64,000 nucleotides of DNA from Bacillus subtilis subsp. subtilis str. 168 (GTDB lineage Bacteria > Bacillota > Bacilli > Bacillales > Bacillaceae). A program made the translations under genes and the position numbers. Positions 27,707 through 32,161 of the stretch are shown here, one piece after another. Within the stretch, counting starts at the first letter, position 1, and every line of letters starts with the position of its first letter. A model generated the notes under the pieces. The model did not search any database. It worked only from the letters and a program-made list of their open reading frames with translations, and had not been told where the DNA came from. The stretch spans positions 930,001 through 994,000 of the forward strand of contig NC_000964.3 of the NCBI RefSeq assembly GCF_000009045.1. Reading direction: 5' to 3'.

Positions 27707-29060
27707 AGAAAAACAGAGAGCGTCGAAGCGGAGGAATACTCTGTTCAAAGCGGAAAACATTTTCTGGATCATATGTCGTTTTGACACGGCGGAGTCGTTC
27801 AACGTTTTCGCCGTAATATGTTCTTGGCCAGTTTCTGATTTCGATATCTGGCCAATTTACGTAGTCTCCCATCGTTTCTTTCGAAAGGGACGTTCTCAGC
27901 CCCTCAATCCAGCGGACATTTTGTCTTTTTTCTCCAGGGGATGTCCAGTTTGTTAAGTATTCCTGGGCGATGATTGCGTCACGATAATAAAATGCCGTTT
28001 GGTCGGGAGCGACCCGTCCGGCTGCCCCGCCGAGTGCTTGCTGCCAGACACTGGCGTTTTGATTCGGAGCGTGCTCTAAAAAGTGTTTTATTGTTGAGAT
28101 CGCACGTTCTGATAATGGCTTTTCAATGAAAGAGCCGGAGCGTTTCATTTTTTGAGGCTGATTGCCTCCCGGGCTGTTAAAAAAGGTTACCGCTTCAATG
28201 AATGGCGTTGTTTTTACCATTCCGCTTGTCGGACTTCCTGCTTTCAATAAAGGCTTTAACAGTTTTTTTAACTCTGTTTTTGGCCCGACAAATTGGCCGA
28301 GGGCTTCTATGCGGTTTACTTCTTTAGGCCAAAACTCTATTGATGATGTAAGCCGGTCATCTGTATACGGGGCCCAGTTCTGCCACGTGTTATATACTTC
28401 CTCAAAATCATCCCATCCCCATGTAATAGAAAAAATCGACACTTGAGAGATGGGCACTGCTTTAAATGTCATGGAGGTGACTATGCCGAAATTGCCTCCT
28501 CCGCCTCCCTGAGACGCCCAAAATAAGTCTGGATGATTTGAACAGCTGACTGTAATCAGATCAGCGCCCTCTTTTTCGTCTGCTACGATCATCTCAAGCT
28601 GCACGAGGCTGTCGCAAGTAAGACCGGCAGCCCTTGTTAAAAGTCCAATTCCCCCTCCGAGAGTTAAACCTGTGAGCCCTACATTAGCAATGGTGCCTGC
28701 GGGAAGCGTCAGGCCGTATTGCCAGAGTGTCCGATAGACTTCTCCCAATTCAGCCCCCGCTTCAATATAGGCCAGCTTTTTATCCTGATTCACAGTTATT
28801 TTTTTCATCTCGCTTAAATCAATAACAAGACCGTTATTTAAAAGGGAAAAGTTCTCATAGCTGTGTCTGCCGCCTCTAATACGGAAAGGCACACGGTTTT
28901 CACGCGCCCATTTCAGCGCATTGAGTGCATCCTGTTTGTTTTGGCAAAACACAATGATGTCAGGATACCTTTCTAAGCTTAGGTTAATATTGGTTCTTGC
29001 TTCGTTATAGTCCGGATCATCCCGTGTCACGATACGTCCGGTCAATTTTGTCTTTTCCAC
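27705..29060 (-). CDS. ygaK: FAD-linked oxidase (berberine-bridge-enzyme-like)
   Basis: 451 aa from a GTG start; RGGRHSYE (covalent FAD His), GLTLGGGIG, GGGGGNFGIVT and C-terminal YVNWPD...DPENVF motifs. Confidence 0.9.
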   Translation of the reverse strand: MEKTKLTGRIVTRDDPDYNEARTNINLSLERYPDIIVFCQNKQDALNALKWARENRVPFRIRGGRHSYENFSLLNNGLVIDLSEMKKITVNQDKKLAYIEAGAELGEVYRTLWQYGLTLPAGTIANVGLTGLTLGGGIGLLTRAAGLTCDSLVQLEMIVADEKEGADLITVSCSNHPDLFWASQGGGGGNFGIVTSMTFKAVPISQVSIFSITWGWDDFEEVYNTWQNWAPYTDDRLTSSIEFWPKEVNRIEALGQFVGPKTELKKLLKPLLKAGSPTSGMVKTTPFIEAVTFFNSPGGNQPQKMKRSGSFIEKPLSERAISTIKHFLEHAPNQNASVWQQALGGAAGRVAPDQTAFYYRDAIIAQEYLTNWTSPGEKRQNVRWIEGLRTSLSKETMGDYVNWPDIEIRNWPRTYYGENVERLRRVKTTYDPENVFRFEQSIPPLRRSLFF

Positions 29061-29170
29061 ACTCCCACATCTCTTTCTCTCGTATTCTAGTTTCTCTAGC
29101 TTATGCGTCAGGGGAAAAGAGTGTATAAGGAAAAAGCGGGGATGCAATCTGATACAGTGTCAACACCCTC

Positions 29171-29288
29171 AAAAAATAGTTGACAGGTCGGTATTGTATG
29201 AATTAACATGGTCAGTACAAATTTTTCAAATTTATCGCGCTGATCGGAACACCGAAGGCTCTTATCGTTTAGATAAGGGCCTTTTTTG
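29171..29288 (+). promoter_or_regulatory. senS promoter and leader attenuator (paralogous to the ssuB leader)
   Basis: TTGACA(29180)-N18-TAACAT(29204); TCGG-aaca-CCGA hairpin; terminator AAGGCTCTTATC/GATAAGGGCCTT plus a T run. Confidence 0.8.
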
Positions 29289-29310
29289 TATGAAAAAGGG
29301 GGGATTATTG

Positions 29311-29508
29311 ATGGGAGTCAAAAAAGAAAAGGGGAGAAAACGATTCAGGAAGCGAAAAACCTACGGGAATCAGATTTTGCCGCTTGAGCTGCTGATTGAA
29401 AAAAACAAACGAGAGATTATAAACAGCGCGGAACTCATGGAAGAAATTTATATGAAGATTGATGAGAAGCATACGCAATGTGTAACTAAATATAAAAAAA
29501 CCCGCTGA
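29311..29508 (+). CDS. senS: small basic regulator of extracellular enzyme genes
   Basis: 65 aa, MGVKKEKGRKRFRKRK...; SD AAAAAGGGGGG. Confidence 0.9.
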   Translation: MGVKKEKGRKRFRKRKTYGNQILPLELLIEKNKREIINSAELMEEIYMKIDEKHTQCVTKYKKTR

Positions 29509-29534
29509 CTACAACGGGTTTTTGCATTTCTCCA

Positions 29535-30986
29535 TTAAGAATCTTTTTTAATCGGCAATCCAAGGCCTTCTGCCACGCGTTTTCCGTATTCAGGATCCGC
29601 TTTGTAGAAGTGCTCGATTTGGCGCAGCTTGATTTCTTCTTTTTCTACCGGCTTCATGGCATTAACGATATTTTCAACAAGGCGGGTACGTTCATCTTCA
29701 CTCATTAAACGATACAGATCGCCGGCTTGAGTGTAGTGATCGTAGTGATCGTAGCTTACGCTGTCAGCGATACCTTGTACCGGATATGCTGCTTGCTTAT
29801 CCTCAGGTGACTCTTTTGGACCGCCGAAGCTGTTAGGCTCGTAATACACAGATCCGCCGCCGTTATCATCAAAACGCATTTGCCCATCACGCTGATAATT
29901 GTTTACTTTGTTGCGTGCGCGGTTGATTGGCAGCGCTTGATGGTTTGCACCGACACGGTAGCGGTGTGCATCATGATAAGCAAAAAGTCGACCTTGAAGC
30001 ATTTTATCCGGTGAAACATCAATACCAGGCACGAGGGTTCCAGGTGAAAATGTCGCTTGTTCTACCTCTGCAAAGTAGTTTTCCGGATTTCTGTCTAGAA
30101 CCATGCGTCCGACCTCGATTAACGGGTAGTCTTTTTGAGACCAAACTTTTGTGACATCAAACGGATCGAAACGGTACGTATTTGCATCTTCTAAAGGCAT
30201 GATTTGCACATATAGTTTCCATGCAGGATAATCACCGTTTTCGATTGCGTTGAAAAGGTCTTCTGTATGGTAATCAGGGTTTTCACCGGCAATTTTTGCT
30301 GCCGTATTGACATCAAGGTTTTTCACGCCTTGTTCTGTTTTAAAGTGATATTTAATCCATACGCCTTCGCCTTCGGCATTTGTCCATTTGAATGTATGGC
30401 TTCCGAAGCCGTGCATGTGGCGAAGTGTCGCAGGAATTCCGCGGTCAGACATCAGGATTGTCACTTGGTGCAGTGACTCTGGTGAAAGTGACCAGAAATC
30501 CCATACAGCCGTAGGGTTTTTCAGGTGTGTTTTTGGATCTCTTTTTTGTGTATGGATGAAATCAGGGAACTTAATCGCATCGCGGATAAAGAATACAGGC
30601 GTATTGTTGCCGACGATGTCGTAGTTTCCTTCTTCAGTATAAAATTTAACAGCAAATCCGCGCGGGTCGCGAACTGTGTCAGCAGAGCCAAGTTCACCGG
30701 CAACTGTTGAGAAACGGATGAACAACGGTGTGCGTTTGCCGACTTCAGAAAGGAAAGCGGCTTTCGTGTATTTTGTTACGTCGTTTGTCACTTCAAAATA
30801 TCCGTGTGCGCCTGCTCCTTTGGCGTGAACAACACGTTCAGGAACACGTTCTCGGTTGAAATGGGCCAATTTTTCGAGTAAATGTACATCTTGAATTAAA
30901 GTTGGTCCGCGAGAACCGGCAGTCATTGAGTTTTGATTATCTCCAACCGGAGCGCCCCAGCTAGTTGTCAGTTTATTTGAACTCAT
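29535..30986 (-). CDS. katA: vegetative monofunctional catalase
   Basis: 483 aa; [13 protein letters not shown] and RLFAYHDAH heme motifs. Confidence 0.98.
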
Positions 30987-31049
30987 GTTATCACCTCTTG
31001 GAATTTATAAGAACATAATATCATCTCTAAGTAAAAAGTCAATATTATT

Positions 31050-31064
31050 TTATAATTATTATAA
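31050..31064. promoter_or_regulatory. perfect Per box upstream of katA
   Basis: TTATAATTATTATAA matches the consensus exactly and sits just upstream of the katA -35 (TTGACT, minus strand 31042-31037). Confidence 0.92.
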
Positions 31065-31227
31065 AATAGTTATCTCTATTAATCGATATATAGTATCGAA
31101 ATTGTTGAAAAACCTTGTTGTAACAGCTTTTTATGACACTTAATAATTTTTGGAGAAATAATTTTTCCTTCTCTATTTGCGAAACAAGCAGAGTAAGTGA
31201 TAAACAAGGATATCAAAAATCGTATTT

Positions 31228-31352
31228 AAAAAAGAGTTGACATATCGGAATAATTTGAATTAACATGTTATTCAAACAAAAAAACAATTGGGCAGCTGAT
31301 CGGACCGCCGAAGGCTCTCATCTCTACAAGAACAGAGATGGGGGCCTTTTTG
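31228..31352 (+). promoter_or_regulatory. ssu operon promoter with a CymR-like motif and leader terminator
   Basis: TTGACA(31237)-N18-TAACAT(31261); ATCGGAATAAT at 31244; 15-bp terminator stem 31311-31349 plus a T run. Confidence 0.8.
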
Positions 31353-31393
31353 TTTTTTTTGAAGGCGGGGTTGGCAGAAAGAGAGGGATAAAA

Positions 31394-32161
31394 GTGGCTG
31401 TGACCATCAGCATCAAAGAAAAGGCATTTGTTCAAGAAGGCCGCAAAAACACGGTCTTAGAAAACATAGAATTATCAATCGCACCAGGCGAATTTCTAAC
31501 GCTTATCGGACCGAGCGGGTGCGGAAAAAGCACCCTGTTAAAGATTATTGCAGGGCTTGATTCTGAATATGACGGGAGTGTGGAAATTAACGGCCGCAGC
31601 GTAACAGCTCCGGGTATTCAGCAAGGATTTATTTTTCAGGAACACCGCCTCTTTCCTTGGCTGACTGTTGAGCAGAATATTGCAGCCGACTTGAATTTGA
31701 AGGACCCAAAAGTCAAACAAAAGGTGGATGAACTGATCGAGATTGTCAGATTGAAAGGATCGGAAAAAGCATATCCGCGCGAGCTGTCAGGCGGCATGTC
31801 ACAAAGAGTAGCCATCGCCCGGGCCCTGCTGCGGGAGCCTGAGGTGCTGCTTTTAGATGAACCGTTTGGTGCACTCGACGCTTTTACAAGAAAACACCTG
31901 CAGGACGTGCTGCTGGATATATGGAGGAAGAAAAAAACAACGATGATTCTCGTGACTCATGATATAGATGAATCTGTTTATTTAGGAAATGAGCTTGCGA
32001 TCCTTAAGGCCAAACCGGGGAAAATCCATAAGCTGATGCCCATTCACCTGGCGTATCCGCGAAACCGGACGACTCCGGATTTCCAAGCGATCAGACAGAG
32101 AGTGCTGTCGGAATTCGAGAAAACAGAAGATTTGGAGTACGCAGAAGGATCAGGGATATAG
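31394..32161 (+). CDS. ssuB: aliphatic sulfonate ABC transporter ATPase
   Basis: 255 aa from a GTG start; [22 protein letters not shown]. Confidence 0.95.

What the first reader, a model, noticed from the sequence alone, without database searches (positions are those of the whole stretch)
29171..31352. Duplicated promoter + structured leader module upstream of both senS and ssuB, flanking katA
Seen in sequence: 29171-29210 and 31228-31267 are identical at 33 of 40 positions without gaps, and both carry TTGACA-N18-TAACAT. After an unconserved 28-29 nt spacer, a second block matches at 25 of 28 positions (GCTGATCGGA[A/C]C[A/G]CCGAAGGCTCT[T/C]ATC at 29239 and 31295). Two of the three differences fall in the loop of a small TCGG-N4-CCGA hairpin. 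The third is a compensatory T-A/C-G swap in the terminator stem that follows. The copies therefore conserve RNA structure rather than just sequence, and they sit as direct repeats about 2 kb apart around senS-katA. Established, from memory: ssu is CymR/sulfur-regulated with control at termination, and senS has a leader terminator. Inference: this is one cis-regulatory attenuator family, possibly a protein-bound or ligand-responsive antiterminator. It would link senS to sulfur status, or mean senS captured a duplicated ssu leader. I do not know whether this paralogy has been described.
Basis: partly seen in the sequence, partly recalled or inferred. Interest (0 to 1): 0.72.

Follow-up and report, generated by a model that had tools for sequence, protein, structure and literature searches.

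The report
Conserved sulfur-gene antiterminator leader RNA
The look-alike stretches in front of senS and ssuB are two real copies of a small RNA switch, a hairpin that competes with a transcription stop signal; the same switch sits in front of sulfur-scavenging genes in many Bacillus relatives, appears undescribed, and has no known reader.

Summary
The blocks match at 33/40, 25/28 and 14/16 positions, are collinear, and occur only twice in the window; no shuffle came close.

The copies are not a recent duplication relic. Each is a module of four parts: a sigma-A promoter, a CymR-like half-site (TCGGAAT / TCGGTAT), a conserved 21-nt hairpin, and an intrinsic terminator.

Its outer strand GGC is also the base of the terminator's 5' arm, in 71 of 74 distinct instances. 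It therefore has the anatomy of an antiterminator.

A genome scan and a covariance model found 80 instances in at least 15 Bacillales genera. All are followed by a T-run. Fifty-seven directly precede sulfate, sulfonate or taurine uptake or assimilation genes, or yezD (DUF2292). All four inner pairs covary, and 99% of pair cells are paired.

No Rfam family matches, and the literature I could reach describes nothing like it.

senS encodes an FbpB-family basic peptide. Its leader places it in this sulfur-gene set, but its sulfur response was not tested.

Best reading: termination by default, relieved when an unidentified factor, probably a protein, clamps the hairpin under sulfur limitation.

The parts
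29171..29210 (+). senS promoter block: -35 TTGACA at 29180-29185, CymR-like half-site TCGGTAT at 29188-29194, -10 TAACAT at 29204-29209.
   Evidence: 10/12 promoter match. The same TTGAC-N2-3-T[AC]GG[AT]AT layout occurs in orthologous promoters. The CymR consensus is recalled from memory (Even et al. 2006), not tested.
29239..29259 (+). senS leader antiterminator hairpin: G1C2U3 (29239-41), G4A5 (29242-43), UCGG (29244-47), loop AACA (29248-51), CCGA (29252-55), A18 (29256), G19G20C21 (29257-59).
   Evidence: Model R1 hit at 29233-29266, 41.7 bits, E 1e-8. The 21-mer folds to (((..((((....)))).))) at -6.5 kcal/mol with 90% of the ensemble. It is also the minimum-energy structure of the nascent leader.
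29254..29290 (+). senS leader intrinsic terminator: stem 29254-29284, then a T-run. Its 5' arm starts inside the hairpin (GAAGGC).
29311..29508 (+). senS coding sequence: a 65-aa basic peptide of the Fur_reg_FbpB family.
   Evidence: Pfam PF13040 at 46.7 bits against a cut-off of 25.
29496..29523 (.). Bidirectional terminator shared by the convergent genes senS and katA.
   Evidence: plus spurious Rfam terminator-only matches.
29535..30986 (-). katA (catalase). It lies between the two modules only in the subtilis, atrophaeus and velezensis lineages.
   Evidence: compared.
31228..31267 (+). ssuB promoter block: -35 TTGACA at 31237-31242, CymR-like half-site TCGGAAT at 31245-31251, -10 TAACAT at 31261-31266.
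31295..31315 (+). ssuB leader antiterminator hairpin: GCU (31295-97), GA (31298-99), UCGG (31300-03), loop ACCG (31304-07), CCGA (31308-11), A (31312), GGC (31313-15). It can extend outwards through UGGG/CUCA.
   Evidence: Model R1 hit at 31289-31322, 38.4 bits. Folds; the nascent leader reaches -13.4 kcal/mol with the extension.
31310..31359 (+). ssuB leader intrinsic terminator: 16-bp stem at 31310-31349, then a T-run.
   Evidence: (-33.9 kcal/mol, z -5.3). The title of van der Ploeg et al. 2001 (PMID 11251850), seen in a reference list, states that ssu is regulated at initiation and termination.
31394..32161 (+). ssuB, the first gene of the ssuBACD sulfonate uptake and desulfonation operon.

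Best explanation
Each copy is a two-tier sulfur-limitation control module.

Tier 1 is a sigma-A promoter whose spacer begins with a CymR-type half-site, T[A/C]GG[A/T]AT.

Tier 2 is the leader RNA. It first folds into a small hairpin, 5'-GCY-GA-(4 bp)-loop-(4 bp)-A-GGC-3'. The 3' outer strand of this hairpin is also the bottom of the 5' arm of an intrinsic terminator.

The hairpin is worth -5 to -8 kcal/mol, and the whole leader, dominated by the terminator, folds at -17 to -43. The terminator therefore wins by default and yields a short leader transcript. Under sulfur limitation a trans-acting reader clamps the hairpin, the base of the terminator cannot form next to the U-tract, and RNA polymerase reads into senS or ssuBACD.

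Shown here:
- The sequence family and its association with sulfur genes.
- Covariation of the inner helix.
- The overlap of the hairpin with the terminator.
- The old age of the duplication.

Inferred:
- That the hairpin acts as an antiterminator.
- That a factor stabilises it.
- That the signal is sulfur limitation.
- That senS responds to sulfur as ssu does.
For: - The Bacillales hits inspected lie between or just after genes and are followed by a hairpin and T-run. Model R1 found 79 hits at E<=0.2 in 514 kb, plus one in L125.
- Context: the downstream genes are Sbp 20, SsuB 11, SsuA-like 6, YezD 6, SenS-like 6, SsuE-like 3, TauE 3, TauD 2, CysH 2, and CysT, MetN, arylsulfotransferase and an LLM monooxygenase once each.
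- Structure: 99% of pair cells are paired, and the four inner pairs show double-sided changes in 7, 7, 12 and 1 sequences. Position 3 is C or U opposite G (UG 38, CG 32). No shuffle of 500 reached the observed covariation score.
- Folding: seven different 21-mers all fold to the same shape as their minimum-energy structure, at 84-96% of the ensemble. The hairpin is also the minimum-energy structure of both nascent B. subtilis leaders.
- Overlap: G19G20C21 pair with the terminator 3' arm in 71 of 74 distinct full-length folds.
- Orientation: the element is always on the strand of the T-run and open reading frame that follow it.
- Literature: the title of van der Ploeg et al. 2001 states that ssu is regulated at initiation and termination. 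B. subtilis yezD is reported as repressed by CymR and Spx (PMC3479203).
Against: - No expression or biochemical data were available, and no reader was identified.
- No PRD, CAT or ANTAR gene appears in the five neighbourhood gene tables I obtained.
- The outer helix shows no double-sided covariation. Its GGC is constrained anyway by the terminator, and the 5' GCY could instead be read as single strand.
- Most instances were collected with a pattern that fixes the core. The divergent ones came from a structure-aware model, so the pair counts lean towards the structure.
- The hairpin is weak compared with the terminator.
- Sulfur or CymR control of senS is undocumented in anything I could read. 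The senS half-site is TCGGTAT rather than TCGGAAT.
Confidence: 0.6

Rival explanations
1. Minimal riboswitch. The hairpin itself binds a small metabolite that reports sulfur shortage, such as O-acetylserine or N-acetylserine, or a sulfur intermediate. Ligand binding stabilises the antiterminator without any protein.
For: The anatomy is the same as in the best explanation. The internal-loop purines are invariant. No candidate protein is found in all neighbourhoods. The element works in very different upstream contexts, either leader-proximal or just after the yezD stop codon.
Against: Only 21 nt, with a 2x1 internal loop and a variable tetraloop. No conserved flanking sequence exists that could build a pocket. 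This is smaller and simpler than known aptamers that act alone.
Confidence: 0.12
2. The hairpin is a sulfur-regulon RNA element with a job other than antitermination. It could be a site for a protein that promotes termination when sulfur is plentiful, a processing or stability determinant, or a pause signal. The terminator would then only set a fixed attenuation level.
For: Compensatory changes are proven only for the inner helix. The hairpin often lies 3-23 nt after the yezD stop codon, so a terminating ribosome would cover its 5' strand. This suggests interplay with translation in those operons.
Against: 5'-GCY is conserved and complementary to GGC, and C/U varies only opposite G. The overlap with the terminator base holds in 71 of 74 instances. 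These facts are hard to explain if the outer helix never forms. B. subtilis-type leaders have no upstream open reading frame.
Confidence: 0.15
3. The short terminated leader transcripts are the functional product. They would be small RNAs, about 70-90 nt, that act in trans. The hairpin would be their seed or protein-binding module.
For: A strong promoter followed by a strong terminator within about 110 nt gives a discrete short RNA.
Against: In many genera the element has no promoter of its own and sits inside operons, after yezD and before sbp or cysH. The 5' parts of the leaders are not conserved.
Confidence: 0.05
4. Neutral relic of a segmental duplication around katA, or a DNA operator (an inverted repeat bound by a dimeric regulator) rather than an RNA structure.
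For: The copies are direct repeats 2 kb apart. TCGG-N4-CCGA is a DNA palindrome.
Against: The element is conserved in at least 15 genera and at unrelated loci. Orthologous modules are more alike than paralogous ones. The helix changes sequence but keeps complementarity: UCGG/CCGA, UCAG/CUGA, CUAG/CUAG, CUUG/CAAG, CCAU/AUGG. U.G pairs are tolerated. Neither fits a protein-DNA half-site. The orientation relative to the terminator is fixed.
Confidence: 0.03

Closest known systems
RAT/terminator antitermination by PRD-family proteins (LicT, SacY, SacT, GlcT) in B. subtilis
   Same: A small imperfect hairpin with asymmetric internal loops lies just 5' of an intrinsic terminator and overlaps it by a few nucleotides. 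Termination is the default, and the hairpin needs a bound factor to win.
   Different: No sequence resemblance to RAT. The hairpin is shorter, 21 nt against about 29. No CAT/PRD gene appears in the neighbourhood gene tables obtained. The associated genes concern sulfur, not sugars.
B. subtilis ssu leader terminator (van der Ploeg, Barone and Leisinger 2001, Mol Microbiol 39:1356)
   Same: This is the same terminator as the ssuB copy here. The paper's title states regulation at initiation and at termination.
   Different: I could not read the paper. As far as I know, the antitermination mechanism, the senS paralogue and the distribution across Bacillales were not described. Treat this as unverified.
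CymR (Rrf2-family) repression of cysteine and sulfur genes
   Same: The gene set is the same (ssu, yezD; sbp and cysH in relatives). A T[AC]GGAAT half-site abuts the -35 box in many of these promoters.
   Different: CymR acts on DNA at initiation. The hairpin-terminator is a separate RNA-level layer, and it also occurs inside operons far from any promoter.
S-box (SAM-I) riboswitch leaders
   Same: Both are transcription-attenuation leaders in front of sulfur-metabolism genes in the same organisms. S-box elements occur in locus L020, next to a motif copy.
   Different: The S-box is a 108-nt four-way-junction aptamer that switches off when ligand binds. This element is a 21-nt hairpin, probably switched on by a factor, and does not match the Rfam SAM models.
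Small hairpin riboswitches (guanidine-II / mini-ykkC, preQ1-I)
   Same: The size range is similar, and a simple stem-loop serves as the sensing unit.
   Different: Those have strictly conserved loop nucleotides or a pseudoknot. Here the loop varies and conservation sits in the internal loop and the outer helix.

Membership tests
Factor-dependent antiterminator/terminator attenuators (generic kind) | Intrinsic terminator between the promoter (or an upstream gene) and the regulated gene | tested here: met
   Terminator-like hairpins at 29254-29284 and 31310-31349. All 80 instances are followed by a T-run.
Factor-dependent antiterminator/terminator attenuators (generic kind) | An alternative structure that is mutually exclusive with the terminator | tested here: met
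   G19G20C21 pair with G1C2Y3 in the isolated and nascent RNA. They pair with the terminator 3' arm in 71 of 74 full-length folds.
Factor-dependent antiterminator/terminator attenuators (generic kind) | Condition-dependent read-through | not testable with these tools
   Needs fusions, Northern blots or Term-seq. Only the title of van der Ploeg et al. 2001 was available.
PRD/RAT antitermination (LicT/SacY type) | RAT consensus hairpin and a cognate CAT-PRD protein gene | tested here: not met
   No similarity to RAT by eye. The Rfam scans returned nothing at the motif. No CAT_RBD or PRD Pfam domain appears in the gene tables.
Known riboswitch or leader families (Rfam 15, including SAM, T-box, ykkC) | A score at or near the family's gathering threshold | tested here: not met
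   Window 28500-32000 at E<=10 gave only chance terminator matches. Seventeen loci at gathering threshold gave only SAM and tRNA elsewhere.
CymR regulon promoters | A CymR box overlapping the promoter | tested here: inconclusive
   TCGGAAT (ssuB) and TCGGTAT (senS) lie right after the -35 box, and the layout recurs in relatives. The consensus was recalled from memory, and no position matrix was available.
CymR regulon promoters | Derepression in a cymR mutant or under cysteine limitation | not testable with these tools
   Papers I could read describe the cysteine-metabolism genes, including yezD, as CymR-repressed. CymR repression of ssu itself is recalled from memory. Nothing was found for senS.
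Fur_reg_FbpB (PF13040), for the SenS protein | Pfam gathering score | tested here: met
   46.7 bits against a cut-off of 25. The pumilus-group homologue scores 33 bits. The NCBIfam FbpB equivalog score is below its cut-off, 30 against 60, so SenS is a family member, not FbpB itself.
DUF2292 / YezD, for the small gene next to many copies | Pfam gathering score | tested here: met
   66.7 bits against a cut-off of 22. Twenty-three such open reading frames lie in the motif-bearing loci. The match to NCBIfam sulfur_OscA is 48 bits, below the cut-off of 85.

The most novel reading that the evidence does not exclude
The hairpin is the recognition element of an undescribed sulfur-status sensor. One possibility is a new family of small RNA-binding antiterminator proteins. 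By adjacency, the candidates are YezD/OscA-like DUF2292 proteins, and in the subtilis and pumilus groups the FbpB-like basic peptide SenS. SenS would then control its own leader and the ssu leader. The other possibility is that the 21-nt RNA itself binds a sulfur-starvation metabolite, which would make it one of the smallest riboswitches known.
Probability: 0.35. Interest if true: 0.85.

Novelty: new member of a known kind. Interest (0 to 1): 0.7.

Why it matters
By the title of the 2001 paper, termination control of the B. subtilis ssu operon has been known since then. As far as I know, no mechanism has been given.

A 21-nt element that is conserved, covarying and overlapping the terminator gives a concrete target for mutagenesis, pull-down and ligand screens.

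The element also defines an RNA-level sulfur regulon across Bacillales, separate from CymR and the S-box. That regulon includes sbp-cysTWA, ssu, tauD, cysH and yezD.

It draws in two small proteins of unclear function. SenS is so far known only as a multicopy stimulator of exoenzyme genes. YezD/OscA proteins are annotated as sulfur-starvation proteins. Both become candidates for sulfur-limitation physiology or for the regulation itself.

Tried and rejected
- Rfam at permissive thresholds gave only chance terminator hits, and nothing at the motif in 17 related loci.
- A fuzzy regex with up to 4 substitutions and indels was too loose: 285 hits against 205 in shuffled sequence. I used it only to spot candidates, then replaced it with model R1.
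- YezD as an RNA-binding fold: there is no PDB relative by sequence. The AlphaFold model is of medium confidence (pLDDT 72: helix, beta-hairpin, helix). Foldseek against the PDB gave nothing below E 0.9. The idea stays a guess based on adjacency.
- SenS against PDB sequences gave only a non-significant Rop match.
- I tried to reach B. subtilis yezD to look for a third copy in the same genome. The two protein searches did not return it. A related Bacillus locus (L125) shows a motif after yezD and before tauD.
- Literature: van der Ploeg 2001, Even 2006, Wang and Doi 1990 and Kawachi 2005 are not held. Ten searches found no description of this motif. One hit on 'CymR' concerned the unrelated cumate repressor.
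- CsrA (GGA), K-turn, T-box and RAT resemblances were considered by eye and dropped. The required nucleotides are either absent or not invariant.
Full report
**1. The observation**

The window reads as the thiC - ygaK - senS - katA - ssuBACD region of a B. subtilis-type chromosome.

The repeat finder returns three collinear direct repeats:
- 29171-29210 vs 31228-31267, 33/40.
- 29239-29266 vs 31295-31322, 25/28.
- 29271-29286 vs 31336-31351, 14/16.

Both upstream regions carry TTGACA-N18-TAACAT and a terminator-like hairpin (folds). Shuffling the ssuB upstream region 300 times never gave more than 26/40 or 20/28. Each consensus pattern occurs exactly twice in 64 kb, and 0 of 100 shuffles reached two.

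**2. Orthologous loci**

I fetched loci around SsuB orthologues.
- B. atrophaeus has the same layout: thiC, module-senS, katA, module-ssuB.
- B. paralicheniformis has a single module between thiC and ssuB.
- B. velezensis has a module before ssuB and a diverged one before an Amidohydro_2 gene next to katA. Its senS module lies 8.7 kb away (L054, L058).
- In B. safensis, B. australimaris and B. altitudinis a 51-53-aa senS-like gene and ssuB are direct neighbours, each with its own module and no katA between them (L105, L120).

An identity matrix of whole modules shows that orthologous modules are 79-98% alike. The senS and ssuB modules of one genome are only 67-73% alike. The duplication therefore predates the B. 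subtilis species complex. What is still shared between the paralogues is a set of discrete islands: the -35 box, a T[AC]GG[AT]AT half-site, the -10 region, 21 nt of leader, and the terminator base.

**3. The family is much wider**

- About half the rows are high-GC genomes. In the ones I looked at, the 23-mer lies in GC-rich sequence with no hairpin and T-run after it, and many share a near-identical flank that reads like a conserved coding region. I treat these as unrelated.
- The other 57 matches are in low-GC genomes, and all but two MAG hits that I set aside are Bacillales. The genera include the Bacillus subtilis, pumilus and licheniformis groups, Neobacillus, Peribacillus, Fictibacillus, Priestia, Niallia, Mesobacillus, Robertmurraya, Ectobacillus, Sporosarcina, Brevibacillus, Aneurinibacillus, Paenibacillus, Tumebacillus and Alicyclobacillus.
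- The Bacillales matches inspected lie between or just after genes, and each is followed by a hairpin and a T-run.

**4. Gene context**

I built covariance model R1 (34 positions, 7 pairs) from 41 distinct cores. It found 79 hits at E<=0.2 in 514 kb of held Bacillales sequence, and exactly two in the window. One more hit is in L125.

All 80 are followed by a T-run. The next genes are:
- Sulfate-binding protein Sbp, 20.
- SsuB, 11.
- SsuA-like binding proteins, 6.
- YezD/DUF2292, 6.
- SenS-like peptides, 6.
- SsuE-like FMN reductases, 3; TauE/SafE, 3; Amidohydro_2, 3.
- TauD, 2; CysH, 2; an Rrf2-family regulator, 2.
- CysT, MetN, an arylsulfotransferase and a luciferase-like monooxygenase, one each.
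- The remainder are unclassified or at locus ends.

A frequent operon form is promoter - (variant hairpin/terminator) - [rrf2] - yezD - hairpin/terminator - sbp-cysTW. L011 is an example. The element is thus a marker of sulfur-scavenging genes, both in leaders and inside operons. No Rfam 15 family matches it.

**5. Structure**

The conserved 21 nt read 5'-G1C2Y3 G4A5 U6C7G8G9 NNNN C14C15G16A17 A18 G19G20C21.

On the model-aligned set (71 distinct sequences), 99% of pair cells are standard pairs. All four inner pairs show changes on both sides:
- U-A to C-G in 7 sequences.
- C-G to U-A in 7.
- G-C to A-U or U-A in 12.
- G-C to U-A in 1.

The resulting helices include UCAG/CUGA, UUGG/CCAA, CUAG/CUAG, CUUG/CAAG and CCAU/AUGG.

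The outer pairs are G-C in 69 of 71, C-G in 68 of 71, and Y-G (U.G 38, C-G 32). C/U variation occurring only opposite G is the RNA signature of a pair. It also explains the single degenerate position in an otherwise invariant stretch. None of 500 column shuffles reached the observed covariation score, and slid registers collapse to 25-59% paired.

Caveats:
- Most sequences were gathered with a pattern that fixes the core.
- The alignment is fitted to the model.
- The outer helix has no double-sided change.

**6. Relation to the terminator**

Seven different 21-mers fold to (((..((((....)))).))) as their minimum-energy structure, at -4.9 to -8.4 kcal/mol and 84-96% of the ensemble. In both B. 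subtilis leaders this hairpin is the minimum-energy structure of the nascent RNA before the terminator's 3' arm exists. In ssuB it can extend to 12 bp at -13.4 kcal/mol.

In the full-length leader, G19G20C21 instead pair with the nucleotides just before the U-tract. This holds in 71 of 74 distinct instances. The median hairpin energy is -6.5 kcal/mol, against a median of -26 for the full-length leader fold, which the terminator dominates.

This is the classic design of a factor-dependent antiterminator. It is weak, forms first, and overlaps the base of a strong terminator.

**7. Mechanism proposed**

- Shown: the anatomy described above and its association with sulfur genes.
- Inferred: termination is the default, and a reader clamps the hairpin under sulfur limitation and allows read-through.

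The invariant GA/A internal loop, the variable apical loop and the absence of any further conserved sequence point to a protein rather than a metabolite. A metabolite is not excluded.

Candidates by adjacency only:
- YezD/DUF2292. It lies in 23 of the motif-bearing loci and is distantly OscA-like. B. subtilis yezD is reported as CymR- and Spx-repressed (PMC3479203). Its predicted fold has no structural relative.
- SenS. It belongs to the FbpB family of small basic peptides, but occurs only in the subtilis and pumilus groups.

Promoter-level control by CymR is a separate layer. T[AC]GGAAT half-sites abut the -35 box in many of these promoters, but I matched them to a consensus recalled from memory.

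**8. What this means for senS**

The senS leader is a full-scoring family member (41.7 bits). So are its orthologues in B. atrophaeus, B. velezensis, B. nakamurai and the pumilus group. By its cis elements, senS belongs with the sulfur-limitation genes. Whether its expression follows sulfur supply could not be checked.

**9. Comparison with the known, and novelty**

The element works like RAT/PRD antitermination but fails the membership tests: it has no RAT sequence, and no CAT/PRD gene appears in the neighbourhood gene tables obtained. It is not an S-box, a T-box or any other Rfam family.

That the ssu leader terminator is regulatory was published in 2001; I saw only the title. As far as my ten literature searches reach, three things are new:
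- The conserved antiterminator hairpin.
- The senS paralogy.
- The Bacillales-wide distribution.

The key older papers could not be read, so prior mention cannot be excluded. I file the element as a new member of a known kind (attenuator leader RNAs) with an unknown reader.

Noticed in passing
window 29311-29508: SenS passes the Pfam threshold for Fur_reg_FbpB (46.7 bits against 25). It is a small basic FbpB-family peptide. Older literature lists it as an HTH transcription factor unique to B. subtilis (PMC1524751). Homologues of 51-60 aa exist in B. atrophaeus, B. velezensis, B. nakamurai and the pumilus group.
   Followed up: partly
L002:2753-2810; L058:7508-7541(-); L094:4270-4303(-): B. velezensis and Bacillus sp. 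ISL-51 carry a third, diverged module between katA and ssuB, in front of an Amidohydro_2 gene. Its inner helix is CUUG/CAAG, three compensatory double changes relative to UCGG/CCGA.
   Followed up: partly
L011:2880-6904 (also L029, L005): In Neobacillus-type loci a variant hairpin and terminator precede an Rrf2-family regulator. The regulator is CymR-like but scores below the equivalog cut-off. It is followed by yezD, a second hairpin and terminator, and sbp-cysT-cysW. The promoter carries a palindromic TAATCCTAT...ATTGGATTTA box.
   Followed up: partly
L028:5363-5396(-), L062:2792-2825: In Fictibacillus a CUAG/CUAG variant of the hairpin sits directly after the yezD stop codon and before cysH (phosphoadenylyl-sulfate reductase). 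Another copy precedes a TauE/SafE gene that lies next to two SAM riboswitches (L020).
   Followed up: partly
L125:2880-2930: The yezD promoter of a Bacillus genome (CP035232.1) reads TTTACAGGTAGGTATTATGTGAATTATAT. It closely resembles the senS promoter block but has no leader hairpin. The hairpin and terminator come after yezD, before a decayed arylsulfotransferase-like reading frame and tauD.
   Followed up: no
window 31043-31068: An AT-rich palindrome, TATTATTTTATAATTATTATAAAATA, lies in the katA upstream region. It is probably the PerR operator of katA (from memory), and is unrelated to the finding.
   Followed up: no
window 29496-29523: A single hairpin flanked by A-runs and T-runs serves as a bidirectional terminator for the convergent genes senS and katA. 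It produced the spurious low-score Rfam leader hits.
   Followed up: no
L006, L014, L015, L017, L022 and other high-GC loci: The 23-nt search pattern also occurs in high-GC genomes. Many of these hits share a near-identical flanking sequence that looks like a conserved coding stretch of an acyl-CoA-dehydrogenase-like gene. No terminator follows. I judged them unrelated to the RNA element.
   Followed up: no
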